64,000 nt of DNA. It comes from Macrostomum lignano (Eukaryota). Below are positions 3,045-31,878 of this stretch, piece by piece (position 1 is the first letter of the stretch; each line of letters begins with the position of its first letter). A program made the translations under genes and the position numbers. The notes under the pieces are model-generated. The model was given only the letters and a program-made list of their open reading frames with translations, did no database searches and was not told where the DNA came from. The stretch spans positions 54,301 through 118,300 of the forward strand of contig NIVC01001312.1 of assembly GCA_002269645.1 (NCBI GenBank), read 5' to 3'.

Positions 3045-3467
<423 letters not shown>

Positions 3468-3798: not shown

Positions 3799-6700
3799 AT
3801 GTACAGGTATATTTCACTCATTTTAAGCTCATTGCTATTTGGCTCCAGTGCGCTGGACTTCAAGATAGGCGTGATCACGGAGGCCGGGAACTTGAACAGC
3901 TCGCTCATCGACGTCGCCTTCGCCAGACGGGTCAACTACAACTGGAGAGTGCTGCAGGGCCACACACTCTCATATGTGCATGTCAATGTGAGCTCGTGCA
4001 GCTCACACCAGGCTGTCAGGACTGGTGAGTTGAAGCATTTGCTACGCGACTCAATCGCTGCTCTGCTCAACCTGCTCAATCAATGCACACAATTGAAGCA
4101 TGAATTGCACGAATGCAAGTGTGAGTGCGAGCTGTGAGACTGTGCATGTGTCTGTGTGTCTCGCTCCGCAGTGTGCTCGGAGAGCGGCCTGTCAGGTCTG
4201 ATTGGCGTCGGCAGCTGCTCTCTGCTGGATGAAGTGAGCTCACTGAGCAAGTCTCTGCAGCTGCCGCTGATCGCCCTGCCGACTGGACTGTGCGACTCTG
4301 CTCGGCTGAGCAAAGGTAACAGATCGACGTATGGCATTTTTGCATTTCTAATTATCTATCTTTATCCGGTTTCGACATGAAATCACGCGGAAATTGCAGA
4401 CATGACCATCGTTGGCAGCCACAGCTCGGAAAACATCGTCGGTGCAGCTGCTTCAATCGTTAACTCGGATTTCATAGTTAGCAGTGTGGGAATTTTCTAC
4501 GATGGTCTCCAGAGTGAGTGATGTGGTTAAAGGAAAATGTGACGTTTGCATTTTTGTTTTATAACTAGACATATCTTATTTAATCAAAACACAATTAGTA
4601 CTGGTAAATGTACTCCCATCATGATTCAAGTCTGCATTTGGTCACTGCAGGCACAACTGTGGTGCAGAACCTGCAGTCCAGCCTCTCCTCTGTCGGTGTG
4701 AGTAGTCTCACATTCCGAGTGGACGACACTGTCAACGCTTCTGTTACTCCTGACCTGGTGCACCACCTCAAGCGGCTGGTCAAGAAGAAAGTGTTCAAGC
4801 TGCTGCTGTTCGCCTCTCCTCGCAATGCTCTCAGTGTGCTCAGGCTCGCCAGGGAAGCTGCAGTGATGCAGCAGAACTACTTCTGGCTCGTGCTCGACAC
4901 CGGACTGTCCAAGGCCGATGTGCTCAGCGTGACGCCGACGAACGCGAACGTCGCTCTGCTGAGAGGCAGCGTGTTCACCGAGTGCACAGCAGCAGTGATG
5001 GATGTGTTTCCTCAGTGCCAGACGGACTGGCTTCGGGTGAGCGTTTCATGTGTGCTGCTTGATGGCTGCAGGGATTCATCATGCAGCTCCGCACGTGTGC
5101 AATGCATGCCTCTGTCGCACTCGATCTCGCACTCGATCGTCGCATTTGCATTCGACAGACTCTGGACGCTCGCTTCGTAGACGCCGTAGAAGCCATGGCC
5201 AAGGCGCTCAACGACTCGCTGCTGGATCCGGGATTCTCTCCCGGCAACGCCTCGTGTGCGCCACTGCGCCACTGGACATCGGGCTCGACTGTGTTCAACA
5301 GACTCATGAGTGTGAGTGAGCTCACTAGCTAGCAAGCATTGACAAGCATTATTAGTTTCGAGCTGGTCTCTTCCCAATCCTACTCGATGTGCAGATCAGC
5401 GACTATGACACTCAGCGAGGCCTGATCTCGTTCAACAGCTCGACCAGACACTTCAGCTCGCAACGAGTCGAAGTGGTCGCGTCCTACAATGAGCTGTGGT
5501 CGTCTCCGGTCTCGATGCTGAGGTCAGCTCAGTTCGATGCATTGAGCGGAGCTCTGAGCAAGCTGTTCCGCTACAAGGGAGTCAGCTTGGCATTCCCCAA
5601 CACCTTCATGGGGTTCAAGAACCAGACTATTATTATTTGTGCTCCTGAGGTATGTATGGCATGAGAACTGATTTGAATGTGTTTGAACTTTCTAACTACA
5701 AATTACATTCATCTCTGCATTGACTACTTCAGAGTGCTCCAATGACTGTGTTTTAGCAGAAGTTTGCAAACAAGACTGTTGTAATGAGTGGAATGGTTTT
5801 AGATTTGCTTCAGGTTTTATCAAAAAAGCTTGAGTTCAAGTAAGTTTGTGTTGACCTCGTTTGCCGTTTATATTGAATCGTACAAGTAGGAGTCCAAAGG
5901 CATCAGCATTGATTTTTAGGTTCATTACAAAGGACTCCCACGATGGAAACTGGGGCTCTCCTCAAAGCGACTCAGTGTATTTCACTGGATGTGTTGGGGA
6001 GCTCCAACGAGGCGTAAGTAGAATGATGTTTTTATTAAAGGCTAATCGATTCTAAGAAGCTTTTCGCAACGTTTTTAGGAAGCAGCAGTTGCAGCGGGTC
6101 CTTTCACAAAGACTACCATTCGTGACTCTGTCGTGGACTTTTCAGCACCACTTTTCGAAGAGTCCAATGCAATTCTAATCCCGAGACCGCCGCCAGAGTC
6201 AAAACTCTGGAACGTGTTTGCACCGTTTTCAATTGGAATCTGGATGATGATAGTTGCCGCCATGCTGGTGGCAGCATTTGTCACTTGGATAATAGCCTAC
6301 TTTTCGCCGTTCACGGCTTACACTTTGAATCTGGATTACGCAATCGCTGACGAGATCTGGCTGCAGGAGTACCTGTGGAGCATCATTGGCAGCTTTATGC
6401 AGCAAGGCCAGGACTTTTATCCATTCTGCATGTCCTCGAGAACTGTTCTGGCCTTCTGGTGGTTGTTTACAGTCATAATCTATGCTTCGTATACAGGTGA
6501 GACCTGGGGTTCCATAGTATTAGCTCAGTATTAGTATTGGTTTTTGCATGCTAAGTGGGACATTTTTCAAGCAATCTGAGACTGAATAGCAAAAACACTA
6601 TTGTCTATGGCCACCCCTCGCTGCAGCCCAGCTTTTTGGGCGCGCCTTGCAAGTAAATTGAGACATTTTTTCAAGCTAAGTGAGAACCATATTGAAAACA

Positions 6701-8597
6701 AAGGGGTGGTTTTACGAAATTACAAAATGATGTACTGTCGGAAACTATATATTTAGAAAAGGATACGCAGGAACACAACCAAACAAGCGGTACAAAAATT
6801 GTTGATAATGTTATAAGCGTTCAAATAAAGGGTTGCATGTTGATACACTGAGCAAACTTTCGAGTGCAGTGGAGCTCCCAGCCTGCGATCTTGTGCGGAG
6901 CAATGACATGCAGCGATTCTCTTCCAAGCCGATCCATCAGCATGTATCGCCAATCATCTCGTGTCATGCCTGGTGGGCAAACGTTTTCCTCAGCCACGAT
7001 TGCGGGCTCTACAAGGCGACGCTTAATCTCATTCTTAAGAGCGCTGTGCGCCATCTCCACGGGATTCAAAAACGGCGAGTACGCCGGGAAAATTTGCAGA
7101 CGAATGAGATCCTCAAACTGCTCAGGTATCTCAATCCCTTGGTGAAAATTTGGACCATCGAAAATGAGACTTTGTTTTCAATATGGTTCTCACTAAGCTT
7201 TAAAAAATTTCTCACTTTGCTTGCAAGGCGATCCCAAAAAGCTGGGCTGCAGCGAGGGGTGGCCATAGACAATAGTGTTTTTGCTATTCAGTCTCAGATT
7301 GCTTGAAAAATGTCTCACTTAGCATGCAAAAACCAATATTAGTCCATGGCTCTACACGTGTACTTGCTACACTGTAAATGGAAGTTGTAGAATATGTTAC
7401 AGTAAGCAGACTCTCTATAGCTTTTAATTTTTGCTTCCAGGTGATCTGACTGCGCACCTGACTGTAACGGTGACAGACTATCCAATCAAGACCCTTCAGG
7501 ACCTGGTGTCGCAGACAGCTATTAAGCCCTACGTTTCTGTTGGAACTAATCTGCACACTTTGCTGACTCAGTCGAACTCTGGAATTTACAAACAGATGGC
7601 CGACATGATGGTTGAGATTGGTCCGTACGAAGAATGCCCATCGTTTGTAAGTCCACTAAACGCTTGTTTATTAAATGCCAGAATATTTCCCAGCTTTTTT
7701 CAAATCACGAGTACACTGAATGATTTGATGCGTATTTTTTGTAACTTGGATTTTTCCTCATGTGTTGACAGCCTCGGAAAGCTGATGAAGGCTGCATGAA
7801 CGATTATTCATTTCTTCTGGCAATCGCAATGAAAAATTGTTCTGAATACTATGTGGCCGATGAGCTGTTCAACACGGCGACTTTGGCTTTCATGTTTCCG
7901 GAGGACGCATACTATGCGGATTCGTTTAATTTTCAGTGAGCAATTTTACTTAAAATTTATGACACGGGCTACTTTTCCTGCAGTACTGCTTCAAAATGCG
8001 CAAGATTTATTTTACTGAAGTAAAAACTTTCTATCAGAAAGGTGATGCAAACTTAGACACTGGAGTAGAGATCTAGACTTCATGTAAAGTGTTTTTCAGT
8101 GTTCTAGATCTGGCTTGAATTCCTAGTAGGAGAATGGTTTGATAAAATTGATATTTGGTTTTAAACTAAAAAACAATAGCTATTTGCAGTAGGTTATGAG
8201 CACCCTTACGTTGACATAAAATCCTAGTATTTATATATCCCTTTAATCTGCTAGAGCCCAAAGCAGAGACCTAGATGAGATGTCTTGAAGTTCCTAAGAT
8301 TAAAATAGCCTGACCTGCAGTTGGTTTGTCCACAGCTAAATTGGTTCAACGTAATTCAGATTGCAGAAGCTGCACGAGTCGGGTCAAATACAGCGCTGGT
8401 TCGAGTTCTATTGGTCCAGCGACACAGTTTGCACCGTTGGAAAATCAGCCGAAGCCGATGCTATTAACCTGGAAGGCGTAGGTGGCTGCTTCATCATCGC
8501 CCTGAGTCTGTTCGTGGCTGGACTTCTCATTTTGACGATTGAACTGATCTGGACTAATCTGGCCAAAAAGCAACCCCTTGACTGCCTGATTTACTGA
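3799..8597 (+). pseudogene. iGluR/IR-like paralogue 2: 12 exons, 834 aa if read through, one in-frame TAG at 5754-5756
   Basis: Exons 3799-4024, 4172-4315, 4400-4513, 4651-5036, 5159-5311, 5395-5649, 5733-5839, 5920-6013, 6079-6496, 7441-7646, 7772-7935, 8360-8597. All introns are GT-AG with consistent phases. The product has a signal peptide, an ATD, S1 (DGNWG, GELQRG, GPFTKTTIRDSVVDFS), M1, a pore loop (GSFMQQG), M3 (SYTGDLTAHL), S2 and M4. The TAG aligns with CAG (Gln) in paralogue 3. Confidence 0.88.
6537..7336 (-). mobile_element. Internally deleted IS630-Tc1-mariner transposon in intron 9 of paralogue 2; 167-bp TIRs, TA flanks
   Basis: 6537-6703 is an inverted repeat of 7170-7336, with TA on both sides. 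The minus strand from 7168 reads LIFDGPNFH...LQIFPAYSPFLNPVEMAHSALK, the D...YSPxLNPxE catalytic end of an ITm transposase. Confidence 0.85.
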
Positions 8598-8759
8598 TGC
8601 AGATCGTGAAAATTCCAGATTGGGCTACGATTTCTACGTGTTAATCAAGGTTGCTCTATTTCTGTGTGATAGAAGGTATTACTATGATACTTTTTAACAG
8701 ATAATGAAACCCTTTCAAATCAAATTACCTAAGACCAGTCACCGGTACTGGAATAACTA

Positions 8760-9410
8760 CACTCAGCAACAGTCAAAACCGCCACCCTACCGAGAGAGGC
8801 GACTTCTCTCTCACCTCACCTCAACTGCAAGTGACGTAACTTGCGCCACGGCGTGGCTAAAGCTGGGTGAGAGTGAATGCAGGAGAGGGCAATCAGGGGA
8901 TGCACTTTACTTAGCAGATTAGATGTTGCCCCATCTGCTTCTTTCACCCCACATTAGACGGAGCAGGTAGCTGGCGCGGTCGGAGTTCGCCTGACAATCC
9001 GCAGCAGACGTCGATTTGCCCTGGCTGTTGAGCCGCGGAGATCATGGCGCTAGCTGCCTATGGCTGCGTACTGAACACTACCAGTCTCTTGGGACTTCGT
9101 TAACAGCGCTCGAATTGTTGAACGTGATCGGCCAAATTGGCGAGCAGCTGCGCTGATGGTTGCACCAGCTTCTAGCATGCCAACAGCGCGCCATCGTTCA
9201 GCGTCTGTCATATGCCTGACCATTTTCACGTGTACAGTGAATTGAATGTTGCACCCCCAACCCCAACCCCAGTCCCTTTTGTACTCTCACCCTGAAATTC
9301 ACTCTCACCCAGCTTTAGCCACGCCGTGGCGCAAGTTACGTCACTTGCTGTTTAGGTGAGAGAGAAGTCGCCTCTCTCGGTGGGGTGGCGGTTTCGACTG
9401 TTGCTGAGTG
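8760..9410 (-). mobile_element. Tc1-family deletion derivative with about 120-bp TIRs and N-terminal HTH remnant
   Basis: CACTCAGCAACAGTC...GGTGAGAGTGAAT at the left end is inverted at about 9298-9410. Minus ORF 9223-9050 reads MVRHMTDAERWRAVGMLEAGATISAAARQFGRSRSTIRALLTKSQETGSV, a typical Tc1 paired-like HTH. The frame continues after an in-frame stop (NRRLLRIVRRTP). Confidence 0.85.
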
Positions 9411-9778
9411 TGGATATATCACTCGCAAGTCAACCAACCAACTCAAACACTCTTTTTCAGTAGAAGAATCTGAGTTTTCTGATTTTATAACAGTAAAACA
9501 ATACATGTAAATTAATGTACTTTAAACATATTTAAAAATTTAGCATCTGCAAAAATCGCATCTGGCTTTCTAATAGCGGATCCATTAAATTAGCATCTTC
9601 ATCCTGTTTTACCTACCCCCCCCAGACAAGCCTTAGACTTGAAATTTTTTGAAAAGGAAATCAGCTTAAGTCTGAGGATTCTATAAAAATTCAAAACACC
9701 CAAAATATAGAGAGCAGGGTTAGCGACCCAGCCCCAGCCAGGCCGATAAACAGTTTGGCTTTCCTCTTGTTCGCTTGT

Positions 9779-9929
9779 GTCTGACTCTGACCTTTCTCCT
9801 TTCTGCTCTCTCATTGGCTGAGCTAGATTGGGCCTGCCCCCTAGGCTGAATTTCGTCCGTCTGACTTTGACCTCTCTCCTTTCTGCTCTCTCATTGGCTG
9901 AGCAAGATTGGGTCTGCCCCCTAGGCTGA
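9779..9929. repeat. 80-bp tandem duplication (about 1.9 copies)
   Basis: CTGACT..CCTTTCTGCTCTCTCATTGGCTGAGC..GATTGGG..CTGCCCCCTAGGCTGA occurs at 9781 and 9861. Confidence 0.85.
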
Positions 9930-10722
9930 GTTTCTTCAATCTCGCCTTCACTTATGTACATCGAGTTCAATGCCTGTACCTTGTTAATTCTTAACCTCAT
10001 ATGCTCCTGAAGCAAAACTCCGGTTGATTGCGATTGATTTGTCTAGTCATCAAAGTATCTGTGAGGCTAGATGCTACATCTCACTGACGTTGCGGAGAAG
10101 TTTTTTCGTAAAAAGTTAAAACAAATCTTGTGTTTCAACATTATAGTGATTGAGTTTTTTATCCCTTCCTCCGTATTAACGGTAATTTGTTGCAGCAGCA
10201 GGTCTCTGCCGATCGTAGCCACGTCACTAAACTGCCTAGCTGGATTGTTTTGAAAAGTTTTCAGTCTCTAACTCGTACTTATTTGTAGTACATTAGAGAA
10301 CATCGCATAGTTTTTGCACTTCAAGAAGAGCTGCTATAAATTGAGAAAGCGCTGACTAGAGCGCAATAACATTTTAACAAACCTCACTACACTACTACAT
10401 TCACTAAAAAAGCTGAAGCGCGTATTGTTTATTTTCTTAGCACTACACAGAAGTACAATTATTAGCTGGTTTCAGTTTCACATTTACAAGTATTTTTCAC
10501 ACCTTCAACATTATTTGCTATTCTATCCTTTTTGTTTTTATATTACTGTAATTTTTCACTGTAACAGTTGCCGATGCAGCCATGCTTTTTGTGTACTGTA
10601 AAACAATTCACTGTTTTCACTTGAATTAAAACACTGCCACATTGAGTTTGATATGACGCTCAGAGTAACCTAGAGACGACCAGATAGTCTGCTGGATTGA
10701 TCTCAGGGTGGCCGAGAATATA

Positions 10723-11007
10723 TACTCAGCAACATTGAAAAGTCGCCACCCAGTGAGCAGCAGTATCTTTCGACCAGCGTCTATCACCTGGCCAACCATT
10801 TTGATATTAAAAAATGCTTGAAAAAACAATGAAAACCGGTCGGAAGCTTCAATCCACCCAATCTTCACCCTCCGCTCTTCCCAATACCTTCTCACCCAGT
10901 TAAACTCTGCGTCACGTAACGCAAGTTGCATCACTCAAAAGTCAATACTTGAGCTAGAATTTACTGCGCACTCTCAAAAGGTGGCGACTTTTTAATGTTG
11001 TTAAGTA
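10723..11007. mobile_element. 285-bp Tc1/mariner-type MITE with TA flanks
   Basis: TA|TACTCAGCAACATTGAAAAGTCGCCACC...GGTGGCGACTTTTTAATGTTGTTAAGTA|TA. The TIR resembles that of the 8760-9410 element. Confidence 0.7.
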
Positions 11008-12106: not shown

Positions 12107-13260
12107 TCAATCAAAAACAGGCGATCCGCTGAATGAAGCGTGACGAGCCACAGCCTTCTTCAGATGCTCTCCGTTTACAAATTTTGAAAACACAGCCAGC
12201 TGAAAAGTATTTTTGCCGAGACATTTGATGATTCGGTAGACCCGCTCACTCCACGTCTTCTGTAGCTTTACGCCCTTCCTGTCGTCTCGGCGTGCATTTT
12301 GAAGTCTCACCCGATCTCGAACCTTGAACTTCTCAGCTCGAGTTCGTAAAGCTTCGTGGCGCCTTTTTATTCGCTGTTGGCTCAATTTGATTCTCCGCGC
12401 GATGAATTTTCGGGATGCAGCTCGCTGTTTGTTCTTCTCGATCATCCAACCCCGATTTACAGGTGCCAAATCGGGCTTCAAGGAAGTAGACAGCAGCGCC
12501 ACTGTCTCGTTGCCTAGCAAAGGTTCGAAGCTAAATGCGGCCTGGAATGGTAAAATTCCAGTGACTGAATGTCGTCGGCTACTGTAGGTCAGTTGAATTT
12601 CATTGAGCCTGGTGTCCCAGTCAGTTGGATTATCCGATGAGCGACACTTTCTTAATAGACTGATGCAGTTCTGGTTCAAGCGCTCGGTCCGTCCGTTAGT
12701 CTCTGGGTTATATGCGCTCGTCTTTCAGTTCCACCAGATTCTAGAAGGACGTCAATAATTGAGTTGCGGAACTCCCGTCCCTGATCGCTGAGGATGATGC
12801 GCGGCAAACCGAACAGTGCAAAGAGGTCCTTCAGTTCCTTCGCGATGGGCGCAACTTGGATGTTAGACAGAGCCCGGAACACAGAAAACTTCGTAAATTT
12901 ACAGCACACTGTCAGAATATACGAGTACTTGGATCCTGAATCAGTGGTTGTTGGCATCGTGATGCAGTCGACACAGAGAAACCAAAAAAGCCTGTTCGCA
13001 TTGTCCGGAATTTCAATCGGATGAATTTCGCTTTGCTTGGTTGAAAATTTCTTGTTGACAAATTCGCACTTGGCGCAAGCTTTCACAACGGATTTGGCTA
13101 TTGGCGATACAGGGAATTCAACGTCGCGAAGTATCGCGAAGTACGACGACGTAGAGAGGCTCAATGTGCTCTTTATACCTACGTAACTTCCCTGAATGTG
13201 CAAAGCTTGCATTTTGCTCTTGACTTCTGCGATGTCGTAAAAAACTTTGCGCTTCTCTTC
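12107..13260 (-). mobile_element. Ginger1/Gypsy-type DDE integrase remnant with one frameshift near 12720
   Basis: Zn-finger remnant (LH...CAKC), core LCVDCI and ILSDQGREF, then after the frameshift TSAYNPETNGRTERLN, WD...Y...HSVTG..PF and a GPY/F-like RKGVKLQKTWSERVYRI. No RT or RNase H is adjacent. Confidence 0.85.
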
Positions 13261-13487
13261 AGACCTCTTTCTCTGACTGTCCGCTTTGTTCTTGACTTGA
13301 CAGTACAACGAGCCTTCTTCTCTCCTCTCTCTTCTCTTTTCTACTCTCCTAGCCTAATTCATCTCTCCTCTCCTCTCGTCTCCTCTTTGCTCCTTTATTC
13401 CCTCGCCTCTCCCTTCTCCTATCTCCTTTCTTTCTTTTTATTACCTCTCATCTCCACCTTCTTCCGGACCGCAGTCATGCTCTAGGT

Positions 13488-13930
13488 CAGGGGTCGACAA
13501 ACTTTTTTACCTCAAGGGCCAGATCGAGAACCTGGCGCATGACTGCGGGCCAGAGAAAGGGAGAGAGAAGAGGCTAGTGAATGAAGGAGAAGAGAAGAGA
13601 TAAAATAGAGAGAGGTGGGGAGAGGAGAGACGGGAGGAGAGAGGAGGAAAGGGAGGAAGAAGATAGAGGAAAAGGGGGGAGAAAAGAGAGAGGAGGGAAA
13701 GGAGAGGAGAAGGGAGAGGAAAGGAGAGAACTAGCATTAGAACAGAATTCGAGAGAGGAGAGGAGAGGACAGGAGAGATAAGAAGGGAGGTGAGAGAAGA
13801 AAACTGAGAAGAGACAAACCTTGAGCGGGCCGGATTGCTATTGTGAAGTTTCAAAGGACCCGAGGGCCGGATAGAGAGGCTTTGCGGGCCGCATGTGGCC
13901 CGCGGGCCGGAGGTTGCCGCGCGACCCATG
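13488..13930. mobile_element. hAT (Charlie-like) MITE nested inside a truncated, oppositely oriented copy of the same family (outer copy about 13310-14137)
   Basis: Ends CAGGGGTCGACAAAC and GTTGCCGCGCGACCCATG; GGCCCGCGGGCC motif; purine-rich interior; 8-bp flanks CTCTAGGT / CTCTAGCC (NTCTAGNN-type target). Confidence 0.8.
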
Positions 13931-13937
13931 CTCTAGC

Positions 13938-14137
13938 CTCTAGGTTCTTTATCTGGCCCTTGGGGTAAAACAGTTTGCTGACCCCTGCTCTAGGTTCTTT
14001 ATCTGGCCCTTGGGGTAAAACAGTTTACCGACCCCTGCTCTAGGTTCTCTATCTGGCCCTTGGGGTAAAAAAGTTTGCCGACTCCTGCTCTAGGTTCTTT
14101 ATCTGGCCCTTGGAGTAAAAAAGTTCGCCGACCCCTG
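13938..14137. repeat. 4 x 50-bp tandem array made of the hAT MITE terminus
   Basis: Units 13938-13987, 13988-14037, 14038-14087 and 14088-14137 each begin with CTCTAGGT and end with the TIR GTTTGCCGACCCCTG. Confidence 0.92.
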
Positions 14138-15666
14138 ACATAAGCGAAATGAGCAAGCGTGAAAAAACAGCGCGCCTGTTGGTTGCCGCTGGAACCCCTA
14201 GTAAACAAGGTGCAAGAAAATCCTGTTCTATACGACCTTCGGCACCCTGACAATCGAAATACCTGGAAAAGGACGATCAAAAAAGTGCAATATGCTAGGT
14301 TTTTCGTTAGCTCGCGCCAGTTATATCAATAATTGCGCTGGCCTTTGTACTCTGATACAGACTGTACACTGGTATTAAATTCAAAGCACAAAATAGTTTT
14401 CTCAAACGTGCTGAAAATATGTACGATTTTTGGGCTCAGCTGGAGATATGTGCGCACAGTATTGCTCGAGTAACAAATTGGAAAACTTGCATCGCCCTCC
14501 TCTAAACCCCAGCCCAGTCATTCTCCTCAGTATCAGTCAGTTGATTGCAGTGCGCTTATCAGGTAAATACATGCAACTTGACCAACTTGCCACCCCAATC
14601 TTTATTCACCCCGGACAGTTCAAGACCAAGAATATTTCAAAGCCGATTTTGTTGTGCCATGGATTAATCCAGCGTAGGATATCGCAAAGCGAAAAACATT
14701 TTGCTTTGCGATGTCCCCAGGACAAATTAAGCCCCCCCCCCCGGTGAACGGAGAGCCTAACACCGGCTAGGCAAACCGGTCAATATTGCTGTGAGCGGTC
14801 TATTTAGTAAACTCGTTCATGTCAGTGTAAGACTTTAAACTGGAACCCCAATCCCAGCTCCAGACGAAATCCCTGGGGTAAAGCAGATCAGTGGTAAAAG
14901 CTTATCACTCGCGCCACGACCCCTAGTTCGATTCGATGATCGGCCACATAAACTTGAGGCTTATATGCCATGTCGCTTTGTCCCAATAAATCTCTACTAA
15001 GACCTACATGTACTAAGAATCTGAGGCAAAGTTCAATGCAGAAAAAATCTGCCACTTGGCTAAATATACCGCAAGAAAAAGCGCATTGCGGACAAATCTC
15101 GGCGGGCACTTCGTCTGCGGGAATTTCCAGTGCTCCCGAGAGGGGCATACCTGACGATTAGAACGTAAGGGTCTCTGTAGACCCTGTGTGAGCTTGTGCA
15201 TGAGTGCGTGCCTGCGTACAGTATTGGCTCTCTGGCATCTGCTCAGGAGTCAGTGGAATGAACAGAATTTCCTCATCGCTGGTTGTAAGATGATGTCCAA
15301 AACTTGCATACGAAACCATCCAAACCAAATCCAAAAGGCAAGGCTCACCAACGCTAATAGTGCAAAAAAACTCAAATCAACAAAGCAAAATAGAAACCAT
15401 AAAAATTTGAGATGATTCAAATCAATTGACTTGAAGGCATTTAGACTTTACCACAAAAAGAAAAAATTTTTTTCTGTAAATCTCAAATTTCTTGCACAAT
15501 TGCCAACGACATGAAATCCGAAGCCACGAAACTTGAAACTGAACTGCCAGTGCCAATTAATTTGAAACATAAAACTGCAGAGATTCTTGGTTCTGGCTAT
15601 AAAAACCCAAGGAATTAAATACTTGAGAAGCAGATCTTTGATTATCCTATCTCATTTGCACTCAAC

Positions 15667-18600
15667 ATGAATAACTTATTGATGCTGATTTCTATTCTAT
15701 TTCTTGGCAGCATCTGCCAAAGCTCACATGGACTGATCTTAAAAATAGGCGTCATCATAGAGGCCGGAAACTTGAACGGCTCGCTCATCGACGTCGCCTT
15801 CGCCAGACGGGTCAACTACAACTGGAGAGTGCTGCAGGGCCACACACTTTCATATGTGCATGTCAATGTGAGCTCGTGCAGCTCACACCAGGCTGTCAGG
15901 ACTGGTGAGTTGAAGCATTTGCTACGCGACTCAATCGCTGCTCTGCTCAACCTGCTCAATCAATGCACACAATTGAAGCATGAATTGCACGAATGCAAGT
16001 ATGAGTGCGAGCTGTGAAACTGTGCATGTGTCTGTGTGTCTCGCTCCGCAGTGTGCTCGGAGAGCGGCCTGTCAGGTCTGATTGGCGTCGGCAGCTGCTC
16101 TCTGCTGGATGAAGTGAGCTCACTGAGCAAGTCTCTGCAGCTGCCGCTGATCGCCCTGCCGACTGGACTGTGCGACTCTGCTCGGCTGAGCAAAGGTAAC
16201 TGAGATCGATTTCTGACATCTTTCCATCATTTCTATCTGTATTCGGTTTCGACATGAAATCACGCGGAATTGCAGGCATGACCATCGTGGGCAGCCACAG
16301 CTCAGCAAACATCGTCGCTGCAGCAGCCTCCGTCATCACTTCGGACTCCGTAGCCCGTGATGTGGCTATTCTATACGATAAACAGCAGAGTGAGTGATAT
16401 TTTGACATTGATACAATAATTAGATGCCGTTTTTGAATGCGCTAGCCTCCATGACTTATTTAAGTTATTTAGAAACTTAATGTTAGGATTTTTAAATGCT
16501 ACGTATTGACTCACGCGTGTGCATCCGAATCGCTTCAGGTACAGCAGTGCTGCAGAACCTGCAGTCCAGTCTCTCCTCTGCCGGTGTGAGCAGTCTCACA
16601 TTCCGAGTGGACGACACTGTCAACGCTTCTGTTACTCCTGACCTGGTGCACCACCTCAAGCGGCTGGTCAAGAAGAAAGTGTTCAAGCTGCTGCTGCTCG
16701 CCTCTCCTCGCAATGCTCTCAGTGTGCTCAGGCTCGCCAGGGAAGCTGCAGTGATGCAGCAGAACTACTTCTGGCTCGTGCTCGACACCGGACTGTCCAA
16801 GGCCGATGTGCTCAGCGTGACGCCGGCGAACGCGAACGTCGCTCTGCTGAGAGGCAGCGTGTTCACCGAGTGCACAGCAGCAGTGATGGATGTGTTTCCT
16901 CAGTGCCAGACGGACTGGCTTCGGGTGAGCGTTTCATGTGTGCTGCTTGATGGCTGCAGGGATTCATCATGCAGCTCCGCACGTGTGCAATGCATGCCTC
17001 TGTCGCACTCGATCTCGCACTCGATCGTCGCATTCGCATTCGACAGACTCTGGACGCTCGCTTCGTAGACGCCGTAGAAGCCATGGCCAAGGCGCTCAAT
17101 GACTCGCTGCTGGATCCGGGATTCTCTCCCGGCAACGCCTCGTGTGCGCCTCTGCGCCACTGGACATCGGGCTCGACTGTGCTCAACAGACTCATGAGTG
17201 TGAGTGAGCTCACTAGCTAGCTAGCATTGACAAGCATTATTAGTTTCGAGCTGGTCTCTCCCCAATCCCTACTCGATGTGCAGATCAGCGACTATGACAC
17301 TCAGCGAGGCCTGATCTCGTTCAACAGCTTGACCAGACACTTCAGCTCGCAACGAGTCGAAGTGGTCGCGTCCTACAATGAGCTGTGGTCGTCTCCGGTC
17401 TCGATGCTGAGGTCAGCTCAGTTCGATGCATCGAGCGGAGCTCTGAGCAAGCAGTTTCGCTACAAGGGAGTCAGTTTGGCATTCCCCAACACCTTCATGG
17501 GGTTTAAGAACCAGACCATCATTGTTTGTACACCTGAGGTACTGTTTCTCATTAACGTTTATTTGAGACTATCTTTAGTGCACGTGCGTAGCTACGTTAT
17601 ATGTATACTAAACCGGAAATATATTTTTCAGAGCTCTCCACAGACGGTGTTTCAGCAGATATTTCCAAACAAGACAGTTATTATCAGCGGAATGGTTTCG
17701 GATGTGCTTAGTTTTTTAGCGTGGAAGCTTGAATTTCGGTTGGTGCTTTGTTATCTGTTTAGTTACTATAAAAATCCTAATTTTAATAAGTCCTCTATTT
17801 TTTGTAAGGTTCATCACTAAGGACTCTAACGACGGAAACTGGGGTACTCCTCAGAGTGATTCAATCTACTTTACGGGATGCGTTGGCGAACTACAAAGAG
17901 GAGTGAGTGGGATATAGCTGAATCTGAATGGCCGATTCACGTCAGCTATTGTTTCGCATCTTGCCTTCTTAAATTGCAGGAGGTTTCACTAGCGGCAGGA
18001 CCTTTCACAAAGACTGCCATCCGTGATTCCGTCATCGACTATTCCTCAGATCTGTTTCAAGACGCCAATGCAATTCTGCTGCCAAGACCGCCGCCGAAAT
18101 CGAAGATTTGGAATGTTTTTACTCCGTTTTCGATCGGGATTTGGCTTTTGATATTGTCGTGTGTGTTTCTGACAGCTTTTATCACCTGGCTATTTGCTTT
18201 CTTCTCACCGTTCACGGCTTACAATATGAATCTTGATTACGCAATCGCTGACGAGATCTGGCTGCAGGAGTATCTGTGGAGCATCATCGGCAGCTTTATG
18301 CAGCAAGGCCAGGACTTTTATCCGTTCTGTATGTCCTCGAGAACTGTTCTGGCTTTCTGGTGGATGCTCACCGTCATTATCTATGCTTCGTTTACAGGTG
18401 AAGCTTTGTCATATTTTCTTCTAGTTTGTTTGTTGGCGCTTTAGTATGCATCCAACTGCATTTTAAACCTGCATTTTGCAATTCCAGGTGATCTGACTGC
18501 CCACCTGACTGTGACGGTCATCGACTATCCAATTAAGTCCCTGCAGGATCTGGTGTCGCAGACAGCTATTAAGCCCTACGTATTCACTGGAACAAACCTG

Positions 18601-20240
18601 CATACTTTGCTGGCTCACTCAGAGTCCGGAATTTACAAACAGGTGGCCGACAAGATGATCGAGCTTGGACCCTACGACGACTGCCCATCCAAGGTGAGTA
18701 AATTCGGTTTTGTCTTTGCCATGACCGCTGCTGGCGCCCCCCCACTCCACGAATATGCATCAATCCACGAATACCATTAGGGGCGACGTTGTTATTGGCA
18801 TATTCGTGGAGTGGGGGGGGGCGCCAGCAGCGGTGATATACCGCGCCCCACAATGGCACGACCGAGATAGCACCCCTAAATCACATGCCCGAGATAGCAA
18901 CCCTCAATCACATGATCGAGGTAGCACCCCTCAATTACGTGCCCGAGATAGCATCCCATGCCCGAGATAGCATGCCCGAGATAGCATGCCCGAGATAGCA
19001 TGCCCGAGATAGCATGCCCGAGATAGCATGCCCGAGATAGCATGCCCGAGATAGCATGCCCGAGATAGCATGCCCGAGATAGCATGCCCGAGATAGCATG
19101 CCCGAGATAGCATGCCCGAGATAGCATGCCCGAGATAGCATGCCCGAGATAGCATGCCCGAGATAGCATGCCCGAGATAGCATGCCCGAGATAGCATGCC
19201 CGAGATAGCATGCCCGAGATAGCAGTCCTCAATGGCAAGCCAGAGATATCGCACCCTGCTATGACTTCGCCCTCGCCCCTCGCTGTCAACACTCCGCTGA
19301 ACCCCAAAGATGATCCCTAATAAAAATCCTTGACGACTTGAAGTCTGATCCGCATGAATTACAATTCCGGGCCTAAACTCTTTCCAGCCGGCACAACCCG
19401 ATCAGGCCTGCATAGTTGACTACTCATACTTGCTGGCGATTGCTAGGAAAAATTGCTCCCAGTTCTACCTGGCCGATGAGCTATTTAACACGGCCACTTT
19501 GGCTTACATGTTTCAGGAGGATGCCTACTTTGCCGATTTGTTTAATTTTCAGTAAGTTTCGCTTGGTTTAATTCAGTGATCACTTCAAATTGATAAATTC
19601 ATTTCTAAGATGAAGGTCTTAAGTTTAATATAACACTAAAATTGACTATTGTCTCAACTTCTAAACTTAATAATAGCAAATGAAGCAACTAGGTGTTTTA
19701 TCAAAATTGCACCCACACTGGAGTTCCAGTCGAAGTTCAGCTGTTCCCATCTCTGTAGTGTATGTTTTCTGGACAGATTTGTGAATGCAACTCGAACAAA
19801 ACACATTCTTGCTTCATTCGGAATTCGGAAGTCCAGAAGGTGAAATATTGGAAATTCTGTGCTAAAACAACTGATAAATTCCTAACTCGCTGATGAATTT
19901 GCAGTGAACTTTGCACTATTTGCGAGTGCAGCGTCCTTGCTTTACTTGCCTCTCTCTGTATTAAATATTTCAATAGTAATTTGTTAATTCGTCAACGCAC
20001 AGCATGCAGAAGCTGCATGAGAGCGGCCAGATACAGCGCTGGTTCGATAAGTACTGGTCCAGCGACAACACCTGCAGCGTTGGCGCATCAACCGAGGCGG
20101 CATCCATCAACCTGGAAGGCGCTGGCGGGTGCTTCATCACTAGCCTGATTTTGTACGTTGTGGGACTGCTAATCCTGCTGGTGGAGCTGGCCTGGACTAA
20201 GCTAGCCAAGAGACAGCCACTTGACTGTGTGATCTACTAA
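15667..20240 (+). CDS. iGluR/IR-like paralogue 3: 12 exons, intact, 838 aa
   Basis: Exons 15667-15904, 16052-16195, 16276-16389, 16539-16924, 17047-17199, 17284-17538, 17632-17738, 17809-17902, 17980-18397, 18488-18693, 19388-19551, 20003-20240. Exons 2-12 have the same lengths and phases as paralogue 2, with no internal stop. M3 reads SFTGDLTAHL and the protein ends KRQPLDCVIY*. Confidence 0.92.
18721..18836. repeat. GC-rich inverted repeat (about 35-bp arms, about 40-nt loop) in intron 10 of paralogue 3
   Basis: ACCGCTGCTGGCGCCCCCCACTCCACGAATATGC (18724-18757) pairs with GCATATTCGTGGAGTGGGGGGGGCGCCAGCAGCGGT (18798-18833). Confidence 0.85.
18860..19224. repeat. Degenerate 27-bp units grading into a perfect 14-bp minisatellite (GCCCGAGATAGCAT), about 19 copies
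   Basis: The perfect run spans 18960-19224 and is preceded by three to four longer diverged units with the same CCGAGATAGCA core. Confidence 0.95.
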
Positions 20241-22081
20241 TCAGATTTAAATCGACCGTATCGATTGGTTACAACTTTTTCACCGCGTTGTCTAAAGGCA
20301 CCAGTAGTCATTAGAAGCACAACTAAATGCACCAAGATATCCTCACTAAGTACTTGCTGTTTTCCCTAATTCAAAGGCTGTAGGTGACAAAAATGCAAGA
20401 ACGACGCTCGGATTAAATATAATTCCAGCGATTTTAAAAGTCCAATCACCAAAGCAACACGAACAACAGCAACAAAATTAAATAAGCAAAACTAGTGTCA
20501 CAGGGCGCGCTTCTGGACTTGGTCGCCAACGCAGGCCCACCGAAGCCGGAGGGACCGCACGCCTGTCCTCACCGATAAGGAGCCTGCAGAGTCAGTGCGA
20601 CTCGAAGAACCTAACAATCAGTTCTTTAATTAATCGTGTGGATGCTAAAATGCAGTTGACTGTTTAGGCCCTCTTGAAAGTATAAATTCGGTAAATGACA
20701 GGAAAAACTGTGACTAGGAAATAGTTCTTGTTTTAATTAGTGTCGAAAATTATCTAAGGTCCTAGGTGTCAGATCCTGCTGTACTGAATAATTTCATCAT
20801 TAATTTAAACAAGCACATCCACCTCTATAATTATTAAATATTTGCGAGCACGTAGTTGTACTACAAAAAATAATTATTACAGCTGCTGCTGTCAACATTC
20901 TTTATGTTCTTTATTATTCAATTTCTGTTTCTGTTTTACTAATGACACATAAATGCGTTAGAAAAATGACTGCCTGTAGCATATTTTTAAAAGCAAACCT
21001 ATAGCACCGTTCACAGAAAATATCGAGAAGAGAACACACTTGGCAAGAACTCGAAGACACTAATAAAAGAGTCAATAAAAGCGCTGGTTTTAGGGGACGA
21101 TGTCGCCGAAGGCGTTTCTGCAAGGTGTCCAATCAGCACTCATTCTAATTTATTGGTATTATTTTATCCTTACCCAATGAAACAAAAATGGATTGCCAAG
21201 ATAGCAAGTCACACAGAAGTGTCCGAGTCAAATAAAAAACAAACAAAGTCCCAAAGTAAAAGTATCACGTTGAAATCCAGTCACAAGTTCGACTCTGAAT
21301 CCTAGCTGTGAATAAGGTAAGTCAAGGTACAAAAATGTAAAAGAAATGAATTTATTGCCGTAATTTTGGGTACTCCCTATTGCTCGACGAGCTTCTTAAA
21401 ATTTGACGCTTCTCAATAAAATACCTATAAAGATAAAAGAGCTCTGAGAGTTAGTGATTTTTGTGGAAATCTTTTTCTAAGACATCATTAAAACAAAGCT
21501 GAAAGAACCAGATAATGATTGAATCACATATGACAAGCCCTTTGAAGACTTTGATTTACCAAACTTTAAAGCAACCAATAGCTCTATCGCAAGACGGAAG
21601 CTGTATCCTTGAAAAAACGAGAATATGCTCCATTCAAACAAATATTGATCTTTAAAAAAGACGTAATGACATAGCAAAAGACAAAGGCAAAAAGCAAAAC
21701 AGCCTATGTTAAACAACATACTGGGAAGCATTCCTAGAAATTGTTCTTAGAGCCTAAGTAGTACCATTGCAGTTATGATTTCACCGATTCGACCGGAAAA
21801 ACCATTTCCAAAGAGTAATTATTCATTGATTCACTGTCTTCCTTATTGAAATATATTTCAGCCACGCGTTTATATAAACCCTAACCAGGGTCCGCCATTG
21901 GCTGCAAAAAATCCTTTCTACAAGCGAAAAAGAGCAGATAAAATAATTGCTTTTTTCGACAGTAAAAACTATCAGAGCTTACACGCATTTAAATGACACA
22001 ATGAAAAGTTAAAAGAGCGTAAAAAGACTTAAAATCACTAAAACAAGCTACAACCAGAAGAGCAATACGTCTGAAACACTT

Positions 22082-25000
22082 ATGGCGGCCATCTTTTTTA
22101 TGTGCATATATCTCCTACTAAGCTGCACATCCGGCCTGGACTTCAAGATAGGCGTGATCACGGAGGCCGGAAGCTTGAACGGCTCGCTCATCGACATCGC
22201 CTTCGCCAGACGGGTCAACTACAACTGGAGAGTGCTGCAGGGCCACACACTCTCATATGTGCATGTCAATGTGAGCTCGTGCAGCTCACACCAGGCTGTC
22301 AGGACTGGTGAGTTGAAGCATTTGCTACGCGACTCAATCGCTGCTCTGCTCAACCTGCTCAATCAATGCACACAATTGAAGCATGAATTGCACGAATGCA
22401 AGTGTGAGTGCGAGCTGTGAAACTGTGCATGTGTCTGTGTGTCTCGCTCCGCAGTGTGCTCGGAAAGCGGCCTGTCAGGTCTGATTGGCGTCGGCAGCTG
22501 CTCTCTGCTGGATGAAGTGAGCTCACTGAGCAAGTCTCTGCAGCTGCCGCTGATCGCCCTGCCGACTGGACTGTGCGACTCTGCTCGGCTGAGCAAAGGT
22601 AACTGAGATCGATTTCTGACATCTTGCCACCATTTCTATCTGTATTCGGTTTCGACATGAAATCACGCGGAATTGCAGACATGACCATCGTGGGCAGCCA
22701 CAGCTCAGAAAACATCGTCGCTGCAGCCGCCACCGTCCTTACGTCAGATTCCATAGTTAGCAGTGTGGCAGTTTTCTTCGATAATCTGCAAAGTGAGTGC
22801 TGTGAATAAAGTAAAATCCTAGATAGCTCCAATGTTTGCAGTATATTTACGGATGTTTCTTCTATCAAAGTTCAAAAAGTCAGACATAACTAAAGTCTAT
22901 ACTTGATCACTGTAGGCACAACAGTGCTGCAGAACCTGCAGTCCAGTCTCTCTTCTGCCGGTGTGAGCAGTCTCACATTCCGAGTGGACGACACTGTCAA
23001 CGCTTCTGTTACTCCTGACCTGGTGCACCACCTCAAGCGGCTGGTCAAGAAGAAAGTGTTCAAGCTGCTGCTGTTCGCCTCTCCTCGCAATGCTCTCAGT
23101 GTGCTCAGGCTCGCCAGGGAAGCTGCAGTGATGCAGCAGAACTACTTCTGGCTCGTGCTCGACACCGGACTGTCCAAGGCCGATGTGCTCAGCGTGACGC
23201 CGGCGAACGCGAACGTCGCTCTGCTGAGAGGCAGCGTGTTCACCGAGTGCACAGCAGCAGTGATGGATGTGCTTCCTCATTGCCAGACGGACTGGCTTCG
23301 GGTGAGCGTTTCATGTGTGCTGCTTGATGGCTGCAGGGATTCATCATGCAGCTCCGCACGTGTGCAATGCATGCCACTGTCGCACTCGATCTCGCACTCG
23401 ATCGTCGCATTCGCATTCGACAGACTCTGGACGCTCGCTTCGTAGACGCCGTAGAAGCCATGGCCAAGGCGCTCACTGACTCGCTGCTGGATCCGGGATT
23501 CTCTCCCGGCAACGCCTCGTGTGCGCCACTGCGCCACTGGACATCGGGCTCGACTGTGCTCAACAGACTCATGAGTGTGAGTGAGCTCACTAGCTAGCAA
23601 GCATTGACAAGCATTATTAGTTTCGAGCTGGTCTCTCCCCAATCCCTACTCGATGTGCAGATCAGCGACTATGACACTCAGCGAGGCCTGATCTCGTTCA
23701 ACAGCTTGACCAGACACTTCAGCTCGCAACGAGTCGAAGTGGTCGCGTCCTACAATGAGCTGTGGTCGTCTCCGGTCTCGATGCTAAGGTCGGCTCAGTT
23801 CGATGCATCGAGCGGAGCTCTGAGCAAGCAGTTCCGCTACAAGGGAGTCAGTTTGGCATTCCCCAACACCTTCATGGGGTTCAAGAATGCTACAATTGTT
23901 ATTTGCACTCCTCAGGTAGCGTTGAACGAAAATATATAATGACTGGGTTGATAAAAACAACAATTCAAACGTCTATAGTGAATTTTTATAAATTTTAGAC
24001 TTCTCCAAAGACAGTCTTTATGGAGAAGTTTTTGAACAACACTGTTATTATATCCGGACTGACGCGAGACATTCTTGACATCTTGTCTTCAAGACTAGAT
24101 TTTAAGTGAGTTGTTCACTGAAATTCAGAAATTTAAATAATTATTTGTTCGATCAATTTTGATTGTTTTGTTTAAATGAAGGTTTATTACGAAAGACTCG
24201 GACGATGGAAATTGGGGCGCGCCGCAGGTGGGCTTGAGCTATTTTACTGGCTGTGTAGGAGAGCTTCAGAGAGGAGTGAGTTCGTTTCGCATTTGTGTTG
24301 TTTTGTGGAGAGCTTTGTGGAAACTTTGTGGTCAACAGTTATTATAAATGAAATATAATTGAATATTTGTTGAAACTTCAGATGGTTAACCTTTCTGCTG
24401 GACCATTTACAAAGACCGCCATCCGAGAGTCAGTGGTTGATTTTTCAACCCCTTTATTTCAAGAATCTAACGCCGTGCTGGTGGTAAAACCGGAGCCTCT
24501 TTCAAAAGCGTGGAACATTTTCATGCCATTCAGCTGGGATGTCTGGCTGGCCCTGGTCGGCTTTCTCGCGGTCTGCTCCATGGCAATGTGGCTATTAGCT
24601 TATTTCTGTCCATTCTCTGCCTACAACTTGGGCATGCAGTATGCAGTTGCTGACGAGCTCTGGTTGCAAGAGTACATCTGGAGCGCCATTGGAAGCTTTC
24701 TACAGCAAGGTCAGGACTTCTACCCATTTGCAATGTCGCCAAGAACTGTTATGTCTTTTTGGTGGATGTTTACCGTGATCATCTAAGGAGCATACACCGG
24801 TAGGTCTTTAAAAAACTTCGGCGTTTTTGGTGGTTTTGAGAATTATTTTGTTGAAACGATCGGTCAAAATTCGAAACCCTATTCTTTCTAGAGTGATGAA
24901 AGCTGGGGCGGTATTGAATTTTTAAGGATCAATAGTCAAAAAGCAGTACAATAAATTTTCACAGGCGATCTAACTGCTCACCTTACGGTTACTGTTACTG

Positions 25001-31690: not shown

Positions 31691-31774
<84 letters not shown>

Positions 31775-31775
31775 G

Positions 31776-31822
<47 letters not shown>

Positions 31823-31837: not shown

Positions 31838-31878
<41 letters not shown>

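What the first reader, a model, noticed from the sequence alone, without database searches (positions are those of the whole stretch)
3853..23915. Domain-restricted concerted evolution: ATD exons and their introns homogenised, ligand-binding domains diversified
Seen: two blocks are almost identical across paralogues 2, 3 and 4, including introns 1, 4 and 5. Block A is about 3853-4320 / 15740-16200 / 22135-22602; I count 3 differences over about 420 bp between copies 2 and 3. Block B is about 4651-5640 / 16539-17530 / 22916-23900. In the same genes the signal peptides, exon 3, intron 3, introns 6-11 and the S1/S2/M1/M4 exons are strongly diverged or unalignable. Established: the iGluR ATD drives subunit assembly and the S1S2 domain sets ligand specificity. 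Inference: repeated gene conversion keeps a common assembly module while the ligand pockets diverge. This would give a family of co-assembling subunits with variable specificity, resembling a constant-plus-variable receptor design.
Basis: partly seen in the sequence, partly recalled or inferred. Interest (0 to 1): 0.7.

Follow-up and report, generated by a model that had tools for sequence, protein, structure and literature searches.

The report
Gene conversion homogenises flatworm glutamate-receptor N-terminal domains
Three neighbouring glutamate-receptor-type ion channel genes of the flatworm Macrostomum lignano carry almost identical DNA (introns included) for their outer N-terminal domain while the rest of each gene is anciently diverged. 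This is a clear new example of the well-known process of domain-restricted gene conversion.

Summary
The window holds three complete 12-exon iGluR genes in tandem (c2 3799-8597, c3 15667-20240, c4 22082-26004). It also holds the last exon of a fourth gene and a decayed exon of a fifth. The best protein matches are from Macrostomum lignano. Two blocks (c2 3853-4320 and 4651-5621) are 96-100% identical in all three genes. They include introns 1, 4 and 5. Signal peptides, intron 3, introns 6-11 and exons 7-12 are 59-83% identical or unalignable. Synonymous divergence is 0.03-0.07 in the blocks and 0.9 to saturated in exons 7-12.

Repeated non-allelic gene conversion is the best explanation. Tree topology changes between segments, block edges are graded, and the blocks are GC-enriched. 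At least eight paralogues share the ATD at 96-100% protein identity, while their ligand-binding and channel parts are 55-75% identical. A second subfamily on another scaffold shows the same pattern, ending at the same codon.

The functional reading (a shared assembly module with variable ligand pockets) is untested. Domain-restricted conversion is already known from protocadherins and RHD/RHCE.

The parts
2..190 (+). Terminal (M4) exon and stop codon of paralogue 1. The rest of this gene lies upstream of the window.
   Evidence: tblastn with P0003 and translation. UniRef model P0007 joins copy 1 to the c2 first exon.
3799..8597 (+). Paralogue 2 (c2), a 12-exon iGluR gene. Exons: 3799-4024, 4172-4315, 4400-4513, 4651-5036, 5159-5311, 5395-5649, 5733-5839, 5920-6013, 6079-6496, 7441-7646, 7772-7935, 8360-8597.
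   Evidence: Hand-built model with all splice sites GT-AG. The 3' part is 99% identical to M. lignano UniRef fragment P0003. Pfam hits to ANF_receptor and Lig_chan.
15667..20240 (+). Paralogue 3 (c3), a 12-exon iGluR gene with an intact 838-aa reading frame. Exons: 15667-15904, 16052-16195, 16276-16389, 16539-16924, 17047-17199, 17284-17538, 17632-17738, 17809-17902, 17980-18397, 18488-18693, 19388-19551, 20003-20240.
   Evidence: Gene model. Full-length alignment to GluK2 structures, E 4e-40.
22082..26004 (+). Paralogue 4 (c4), a 12-exon iGluR gene. Exons: 22082-22307, 22455-22598, 22679-22792, 22916-23301, 23424-23576, 23661-23915, 23999-24105, 24182-24275, 24382-24799, 24965-25170, 25248-25411, 25764-26004.
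   Evidence: Gene model.
3853..4320 (+). Homogenised block A in c2: mature part of exon 1, intron 1, exon 2. It starts at the predicted signal-peptide boundary.
15733..16200 (+). Homogenised block A in c3. Near-identity starts about 45 bp further in, at ~15778. c3-c4 identity continues through intron 2 to ~16290.
22136..22602 (+). Homogenised block A in c4.
4651..5621 (+). Homogenised block B in c2: exon 4, intron 4, exon 5, intron 5 and exon 6 up to the codons for '...FMGFKN'.
16539..17510 (+). Homogenised block B in c3.
22916..23887 (+). Homogenised block B in c4.
4316..4650 (+). Less-homogenised gap between the blocks in c2 (intron 2, exon 3, intron 3). The homologous stretches are 16196-16538 in c3 and 22599-22915 in c4. 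Exon 3 occurs in discrete types shared between paralogues.
5754..5756 (+). In-frame TAG in c2 exon 7 (start of S1), where c3 has CAG. The AG at 5755-5756 could serve as an alternative acceptor that keeps the frame but deletes 8 codons.
24784..24786 (+). In-frame TAA in c4 exon 9, in M3 just before the SYTG.DLTAHLTV motif. c2 and c3 have a Tyr codon here.
27060..27310 (+). Decayed relic of an iGluR terminal exon, with stops and frameshifts. It is probably the remnant of a fifth array member.
   Evidence: Nucleotide similarity to the copy 1 terminal exon and three-frame translation.

Best explanation
The window carries part of a tandem array of Macrostomum lignano ionotropic glutamate receptor genes whose duplications are old. 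Exons 7-12 have saturated or near-saturated synonymous divergence, and their introns are unalignable.

The DNA that encodes the amino-terminal domain has been overwritten repeatedly, and recently, by non-allelic (interlocus) gene conversion between array members. This stretch runs from just after the signal peptide to the codon before the first strand of S1, and includes the introns in between. Conversion here means double-strand-break repair that copies a few hundred to ~1500 bp from a paralogue.

Tracts cannot extend into flanks that have lost homology: different 5' flanks and signal peptides on one side, diverged LBD exons and introns on the other. Any tracts that homogenise the ligand-binding domain are probably also removed by selection. 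The result is an almost identical ATD on otherwise different subunits.

Shown: the sequence pattern, its DNA-level nature, its recurrence and its family-wide extent.

Inferred: the repair mechanism, the cause of the fixed boundaries, and any functional consequence such as a shared ATD dimerisation surface that would permit co-assembly.
For: 1. Both blocks are bounded on both sides by diverged paralogous sequence inside otherwise collinear genes with identical exon lengths.

2. Introns 1, 4 and 5 are 97.6-99.3% identical, while introns 3 and 6-11 are unalignable. dS is 0.025-0.066 in block exons and 0.93 to saturated in exons 7-12. Fisher P is 2e-58 or lower.

3. Topology changes along the gene. 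It is (c2,c3) in exons 7-12, (c2,c4) in exon 3, and (c3,c4) in intron 2 and block B.

4. Differences become denser towards each block edge, and different pairs have different end points, as expected for many tracts with variable ends.

5. GC footprint: GC3 is 0.72-0.74 in homogenised exons against 0.54-0.60 in exons 7-12. GC is 0.51 in introns 1, 4 and 5 against 0.35-0.44 in the other introns. This fits long-term GC-biased conversion.

6. UniRef proteins, which I take to derive from a different M. lignano assembly, show at least 8 paralogues with distinct signal peptides and distinct LBDs. Their ATD core is 96-100% identical and their LBD/TMD 55-75% identical. The P0024 subfamily is equally distant in LBD (54-62%) but only 49-57% identical in ATD.

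7. A c2-like copy in that assembly (P0017) differs from the window's c2 at 16 residues, and 13 of them are the c4 state.

8. The NCBI scaffold NIVC01000067.1 (L002) carries three genes of the P0024 subfamily. Copy B is 97.5-98.6% identical to copies A and C over 1.5 kb of ATD DNA, and 48-78% beyond. The break falls at the same homologous codon, after '...GFKN'.
Against: - No read-level data were available, so some inflation of identity by assembly polishing cannot be excluded.
- No sister-species sequences were available. The classical test (paralogues closer than orthologues in the converted segment only) could not be run.
- A Sawyer-type run test on the three CDSs alone was uninformative, because all three copies are homogenised together.
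- The GC enrichment has no unconverted ATD as a control.
- c2 and c4 carry premature stops. Homogenisation in them cannot be maintained by selection on those genes themselves, which argues for a mechanical process more than an adaptive one.
Confidence: 0.85

Rival explanations
1. Adaptive 'constant module' version. Selection actively favours conversion-maintained identity of the ATD because it is the assembly interface. Many subunits with different ligand pockets can then co-assemble. Selection against conversion in the LBD sets the 3' boundary.
For: - The 3' boundary falls at the same codon, the ATD/S1 junction, in two subfamilies.
- The 5' boundary falls at the signal-peptide end in c2 and c4.
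- ATD dimerisation is a key step controlling iGluR assembly (PMC5665649).
- Selection-limited, domain-specific conversion is the accepted model for protocadherins and for RHCE/RHD (PMC3966226).
- dN/dS in the blocks is 0.27-0.51, so some constraint remains.
Against: - There are no expression, assembly or ligand data.
- c2 and c4 have premature stops yet are equally homogenised.
- Exons 7-12 show purifying, not diversifying, selection on average.
- Homology-limited conversion alone can produce stable boundaries.
- The 5' boundary in the second subfamily is different: it lies in the last ~35 bp of exon 1.
Confidence: 0.3
2. One-off event. A single recent segmental replacement, or a burst of unequal crossovers, pasted one ATD cassette onto old genes, and nothing has happened since.
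For: Block divergence is low and fairly even (about 1-3%). In block A the singleton differences are spread equally over the three copies.
Against: - At least eight genes plus a second subfamily cannot be converted by one event.
- Different pairs have different tract ends, and intron 2 is shared only by c3 and c4.
- Exon 3 has intermediate dS and shuffled types.
- c2-like copies differ by c4-type variants.
- The GC footprint needs many rounds of conversion.
Confidence: 0.07
3. Assembly or polishing artefact. Collapsed or mis-polished paralogous reads made the ATD regions look identical.
For: From general knowledge, M. lignano is repeat-rich and a hidden polyploid, and its assemblies are long-read based with polishing. 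No reads could be inspected here.
Against: - Copy-specific singletons persist inside the blocks.
- The flanks are far too diverged for reads of several kb to mismap.
- The same near-identical ATD on different LBDs appears in UniRef models from another assembly, and in an independent NCBI scaffold for a second subfamily.
- Polishing could at most raise identity from about 95% to 99%. It could not create identity from the ~50% protein identity expected without homogenisation.
Confidence: 0.05
4. Extreme purifying selection on the ATD protein alone, without any DNA exchange.
For: The ATD protein is 96-100% identical among paralogues.
Against: - Introns 1, 4 and 5 and synonymous sites are as identical as replacement sites.
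- The ATD is the less conserved domain in the comparison with the P0024 subfamily: 49-57% identity against 54-62% for the LBD.
Confidence: 0.01

Closest known systems
Ectodomain-specific gene conversion in clustered protocadherin variable exons (Noonan et al. 2004, as summarised in Ohta 2010, PMC3966226)
   Same: Tandem paralogous receptor units in which one extracellular domain is homogenised by conversion while the neighbouring domains stay diverse. Trees of the homogenised domain have very short branches. The accepted interpretation is conversion opposed by selection elsewhere.
   Different: In the protocadherin case each variable unit is a single large exon spliced to shared constant exons. 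Here each gene is complete, with 12 exons, and carries its own ATD exons. Introns are homogenised too. The protein family, phylum and domain involved are all different.
RHD/RHCE and similar two-locus cases where selection excludes one exon from conversion (Innan 2003, cited in PMC3966226)
   Same: A mosaic of converted and unconverted segments within paralogues, with the unconverted part thought to carry the functional difference.
   Different: Those cases involve two genes of recent origin. Here at least eight old paralogues are involved, and the converted part is a whole domain.
Vertebrate AMPA/kainate receptor ATDs as assembly determinants (e.g. PMC5665649)
   Same: The same domain architecture (ATD-S1-M1-M3-S2-M4). 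The closest solved structures are GluK2 and GluK1.
   Different: Vertebrate subunits have diverged ATDs whose different affinities sort subunits into heteromers. Here the ATDs are nearly identical. Sequence similarity to GluK2 is low (E 4e-40 over the full length), and the M3 motif reads SYTGDLTAHLTV.
Tandem arrays of arthropod variant ionotropic receptors (IRs) and other chemoreceptor arrays with occasional gene conversion
   Same: Lineage-specific tandem expansion of iGluR-related genes. Conversion is noted sporadically in chemoreceptor arrays (papers listed, not read in detail).
   Different: From general knowledge, most IRs lack an ATD. I found no report of ATD-restricted homogenisation (one search returned no paper).

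Membership tests
Ionotropic glutamate receptor (AMPA/kainate/delta-like architecture) | N-terminal LIVBP-type ATD (Pfam ANF_receptor) | tested here: met
   PF01094 hit at E 9e-11 on spliced ATD exons. PF01094 is precomputed on P0006, P0007 and P0008.
Ionotropic glutamate receptor (AMPA/kainate/delta-like architecture) | S1/S2 ligand-binding domain, with the conserved S1 Arg and S2 acidic residue | tested here: met
   PF10613 is precomputed on full-length relatives. The HMMER alignment to GluK2 places the R of 'AIRDSVIDYS' on the R of GluK2 'YVREKVIDFS', and the D of 'IVDYS' on the E of GluK2 'LMEST'. This rests on alignment only.
Ionotropic glutamate receptor (AMPA/kainate/delta-like architecture) | Pore-forming TMD (Pfam Lig_chan) with an M3 SYTANLAAF-type motif | tested here: met
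   PF00060 hit at E 2e-26. The motif is a variant, SYTGDLTAHLTV, and the pore loop reads MQQGQDFYP.
Ionotropic glutamate receptor (AMPA/kainate/delta-like architecture) | Uninterrupted reading frame | tested here: inconclusive
   c3 is intact at 838 aa. c2 has a TAG at 5754-5756 and c4 a TAA at 24784-24786. Whether these are real null alleles, pseudogenes or base errors could not be checked. No c4 counterpart exists in the protein database.
Interlocus (non-allelic) gene conversion / concerted evolution | Discrete high-identity tracts flanked on both sides by diverged paralogous sequence | tested here: met
Interlocus (non-allelic) gene conversion / concerted evolution | Homogenisation of silent sites and introns as well as replacement sites | tested here: met
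   Introns 1, 4 and 5 are 97.6-99.3% identical. dS is 0.025-0.066 in the blocks against 0.93 or more elsewhere.
Interlocus (non-allelic) gene conversion / concerted evolution | Conflicting relationships between adjacent segments | tested here: met
   Topology is (c2,c3) in exons 7-12, (c2,c4) in exon 3, and (c3,c4) in intron 2 and block B. Exon-3 types are shared across unrelated LBDs. P0017 differs from c2 by c4-type variants.
Interlocus (non-allelic) gene conversion / concerted evolution | In the converted segment only, paralogues within a species are closer than orthologues between species | not testable with these tools
   No sister-species Macrostomum sequence could be retrieved. The collections searchable by DNA are prokaryotic, viral or metagenomic.
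Interlocus (non-allelic) gene conversion / concerted evolution | Significant fragment test (GENECONV/Sawyer type) | tested here: inconclusive
   The run test on three CDSs had no power, because all copies are co-homogenised. Heterogeneity of divergence is overwhelming by Fisher test.
Constant-plus-variable receptor loci (clustered protocadherin, Ig/TCR, UGT1 type) | Many variable units joined by splicing or rearrangement to one shared constant exon set | tested here: not met
   Each of c2, c3 and c4 has its own complete set of ATD exons with its own start codon and signal peptide. The resemblance is in sequence pattern only.

The most novel reading that the evidence does not exclude
M. lignano maintains at least two 'constant' ATD classes. 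Class I sits on at least 8 genes. Class II sits on the P0024-type genes. Each class is kept near-identical by conversion on a set of otherwise old and different ligand-binding/channel modules. The tract end is fixed at the same ATD/S1 codon in both classes because selection, or a site-specific recombination feature, defines it. This would be a germline-encoded modular receptor repertoire in which identical ATDs allow free heteromerisation of subunits with different ligand pockets. It would be an iGluR counterpart of the protocadherin logic.
Probability: 0.2. Interest if true: 0.7.

Novelty: new member of a known kind. Interest (0 to 1): 0.5.

Why it matters
The case is unusually clean and multi-copy. 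A whole protein domain, the one that governs subunit assembly in vertebrate iGluRs, is kept at 96-100% identity across at least eight otherwise ancient paralogues. The boundaries match the domain borders, and the pattern repeats in a second subfamily.

If the ATDs really mediate promiscuous co-assembly, this would be a natural experiment in modular receptor evolution, in a genetically tractable flatworm.

There are also practical consequences:
- Phylogenies or orthology calls for flatworm iGluRs built on full-length proteins will be misleading.
- Short-read mapping, RNAi or in-situ probes, and CRISPR guides aimed at the 5' 1.8 kb will hit the whole family.

Tried and rejected
- The repeat finder on the whole window was swamped by satellites. 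I replaced it with self-BLAST.
- A Sawyer/GENECONV-style longest-run permutation test on the three CDSs gave weak or no signal (P 0.006-0.54). The converted region has almost no polymorphic sites when all copies are homogenised together. It needs an unconverted outgroup at DNA level, so I used heterogeneity tests and dS instead.
- Exact-sequence look-ups in public contigs found nothing. These covered copy-specific ORFs spanning intron 3, exon 4 and intron 4 (c3, c2), a neighbouring ORF and P0006. No independent DNA of this very array could therefore be obtained.
- A search for a c4 LBD counterpart, to cross-check its stop codon, found only paralogues of 64% identity or less.
- I first thought the S2 acidic ligand-binding residue was replaced by Ala. 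The HMMER alignment to GluK2 shows a conserved Asp instead, so I dropped the idea of a non-amino-acid ligand.
- A transposon or cassette-capture origin of the blocks is rejected. The blocks sit in frame in genes with identical exon lengths and intron phases, and they have no terminal repeats.
- I did not attempt structure prediction of the ATD to map exon 3. The permitted alignment is shallow and nearly invariant, and the tools give no interface analysis.

Full report
**What is in the window**

The window is eukaryotic DNA. Its best protein matches are all Macrostomum lignano UniRef and NCBI entries. One fragment (P0003) is 99% identical to the 3' end of copy 2.

Self-BLAST and tblastn show three complete iGluR-type genes on the + strand. 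There is also the terminal exon of a fourth gene at the window start, and a decayed terminal exon at about 27060-27310.

I built gene models by hand. Each gene has 12 exons, exons 2-11 have identical lengths in the three genes, and every intron is GT-AG. Pfam finds ANF_receptor (the ATD) and Lig_chan. The whole c3 protein aligns end to end with GluK2 and GluK1 structures at E 4e-40. The S1 arginine and the S2 acidic residue are conserved, and the M3 motif is the variant SYTGDLTAHLTV.

**The observation**

A three-way alignment shows two blocks of 96-100% identity: c2 3853-4320 and 4651-~5621, with the homologous stretches in c3 and c4. The 5' flanks are unalignable, the signal peptides are diverged, and a less similar gap lies between the blocks. 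After the codons for '...FMGFKN' similarity drops abruptly to 35-83%.

Per feature, the values are:

| Feature | Identity |
|---|---|
| Intron 1 | 98.6-99.3% |
| Exon 2 | 99.3-100% |
| Exon 4 | 97.7-98.4% |
| Intron 4 | 98.4-99.2% |
| Exon 5 | 98.0-98.7% |
| Intron 5 | 97.6-98.8% |
| Exon 6 | 94.1-95.7% (differences concentrated in its last 27 bp) |
| Exon 3 | 73-83% |
| Intron 3 | 41-65% |
| Exons 7-12 | 59-83% |
| Introns 6-11 | essentially unalignable |

Three refinements apply. Block B ends near 5621. Intron 2 is homogenised between c3 and c4 only. Exon 3 is intermediate rather than strongly diverged.

**It is a DNA-level process**

Nei-Gojobori dS is 0.025-0.066 in block exons. In exons 7-12 it is 0.93 for c2-c3 and saturated against c4. 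dN/dS in exons 7-12 is 0.08-0.16, so these parts are old and were under purifying selection. The contrast in differences per site has Fisher P between 2e-58 and 2e-106.

Identity of introns and synonymous sites rules out protein-level constraint as the cause. Divergence on both sides of the blocks rules out a simple recent duplication.

**It is repeated, not a single event**

- Relationships change along the gene. c2 and c3 are sisters in exons 7-12. c2 and c4 are closest in exon 3. c3 and c4 are closest in intron 2 and block B (13 c2-specific sites against 7 and 5).
- Differences become denser towards each block edge, and the left edge of block A differs between pairs.
- Exon 3 occurs in a few discrete types that are shared by paralogues with unrelated signal peptides and LBDs.
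- A c2-like protein (P0017) has the same signal peptide but differs from the window's c2 at 16 residues. I take it to come from a different M. lignano assembly. Thirteen of those residues are the c4 state.
- The blocks are GC-enriched. GC3 is 0.72-0.74 against 0.54-0.60. Intron GC is 0.51 against 0.35-0.44. Whole-block GC is 0.55-0.57 against 0.40-0.47. This is the footprint expected from long-term GC-biased conversion, although no unconverted ATD was available as a control.

**Extent in the genome**

UniRef models reveal at least eight paralogues. They are c1-c4 plus four others, with signal peptides starting MAEAMAIILG.., MTTSKTVKE.., MKQHLSTK.. and ..LIRLDLRVGV...

Their ATD cores are 96-100% identical at the protein level, and their LBD/TMD parts 55-75%. 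The P0024/P0009 subfamily is no more distant in LBD/TMD (54-62%) but only 49-57% identical in ATD. Without homogenisation, the class I ATDs should therefore be about half identical.

**A second, independent case**

The NCBI scaffold NIVC01000067.1 (locus L002) holds three genes of the P0024 subfamily. Copy B is 97.5-98.6% identical to copies A (inverted) and C over about 1.5 kb of ATD-coding DNA, introns included. Beyond that it falls to 48-78%.

The break lies after '...FPNTFLGFKN', the same homologous codon as in the window. The 5' end of that tract is different: it lies in the last ~35 bp of exon 1, and copy B lacks the rest of exon 1. A second short island of 94-98% identity covers M2-M3 in L002. 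The c2-c3 pair in the window also has reduced dS there.

**Mechanism**

The best-supported explanation is recurrent non-allelic gene conversion among tandem, and at least once inverted, paralogues. It is confined to the region that still has enough homology.

Whether the boundaries are set only by loss of homology or also by selection against homogenising the LBD is open. The shared 3' boundary at the ATD/S1 junction in two subfamilies favours a role for selection, as accepted for protocadherin ectodomains and RHCE/RHD (PMC3966226). The equal homogenisation of two copies with premature stops favours a mechanical process.

**Function**

[quoted passage not shown] Identical ATDs could therefore permit co-assembly. 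Nothing here tests expression, assembly or ligand specificity.

In this sequence c2 has a TAG at 5754-5756. It might be bypassed by an alternative acceptor at 5757, at the cost of 8 codons. c4 has a TAA in M3 at 24784-24786. Only c3 is intact. Because dN/dS in these lineages is low, the stops must be recent, allelic, or errors.

**Artefact**

Collapse or over-polishing cannot create this pattern from the ~50% protein identity expected without homogenisation. Copy-specific singletons persist in the blocks, and the pattern recurs in another assembly's gene models and on another scaffold. Read-level confirmation is still missing.

**Novelty**

I found no paper describing ATD-restricted conversion in iGluRs, or gene conversion in M. 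lignano receptor genes. The phenomenon itself is a known kind. This is a new, clean and multi-copy member of it.

Noticed in passing
window 5754-5756 and 24784-24786: In-frame stop codons in c2 (TAG, exon 7) and c4 (TAA, exon 9, M3). Only c3 has an intact frame. The AG of the c2 TAG could act as an alternative acceptor.
   Followed up: partly
window 6532-6703 and 7170-7341: A 172-bp inverted repeat (94.8% identity) inside the 944-bp intron 9 of c2. The same intron is 90 bp in c3 and 165 bp in c4. It looks like a foldback or MITE-type insertion.
   Followed up: no
window 18853-19248: A 14-bp / ~56-bp tandem repeat (CATGCCCGAGATAG and variants) that inflates intron 10 of c3 to 694 bp.
   Followed up: no
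window ~27060-27310: A relic of an iGluR terminal exon with stops and frameshifts, 1 kb downstream of c4. It is probably the remnant of a lost fifth array member.
   Followed up: partly
window 12107-13308 (- strand): Two adjoining ORFs between c2 and c3. One has a sub-threshold integrase-core (rve) match (E 1.6e-6, below the gathering score). It is probably a decayed retroelement. Nearby repeats at 13313-14142 recur in inverted orientation at 28265-29462.
   Followed up: partly
window 40780-47155: A 237/238-bp satellite array of about 26 units. It has two sequence variants about 82% alike, arranged in blocks, plus inserted 68-71-bp sub-repeats that give 306- and 377-bp units.
   Followed up: no
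window 1290-1863; 1970-2252; 3044-3465; 31691-33584; 34082-34378; 34861-35136; 38786-39082; 48309-48607; 50826-52492: Many micro- and minisatellites: a 28-bp repeat, a 21/43-bp repeat at 1970-2252, GTTA, ATAG, TGTCTGTC and TCTG runs, a separate 21/43-bp repeat at 34861-35136, and a 19-bp minisatellite with 87 copies. They make up a large share of the non-genic DNA.
   Followed up: no
window 36003-36914 (-), 60613-61728 (+), 62046-62579 (+): Long ORFs with no Pfam match. By eye only, the first has a C-type-lectin-like 'QPD' stretch and the second a 'CEDFYSYACGHF' motif reminiscent of M13 peptidase N-termini. Neither was confirmed.
   Followed up: partly
L002 12221-12420 and window c2 ~6313-6500 / c3 ~18214-18400: A second short island of high identity or low dS over the M2-M3 pore region, seen in both subfamilies. 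It may be an additional conversion tract outside the ATD.
   Followed up: partly
L002 9988-10040: Copy B of the second subfamily lacks most of exon 1. Homology to copies A and C starts 35 bp before the exon-1 donor, and its S1 has an aberrant 'SEREFHIGFG' stretch. It is probably a 5'-truncated pseudogene that is nevertheless homogenised.
   Followed up: partly
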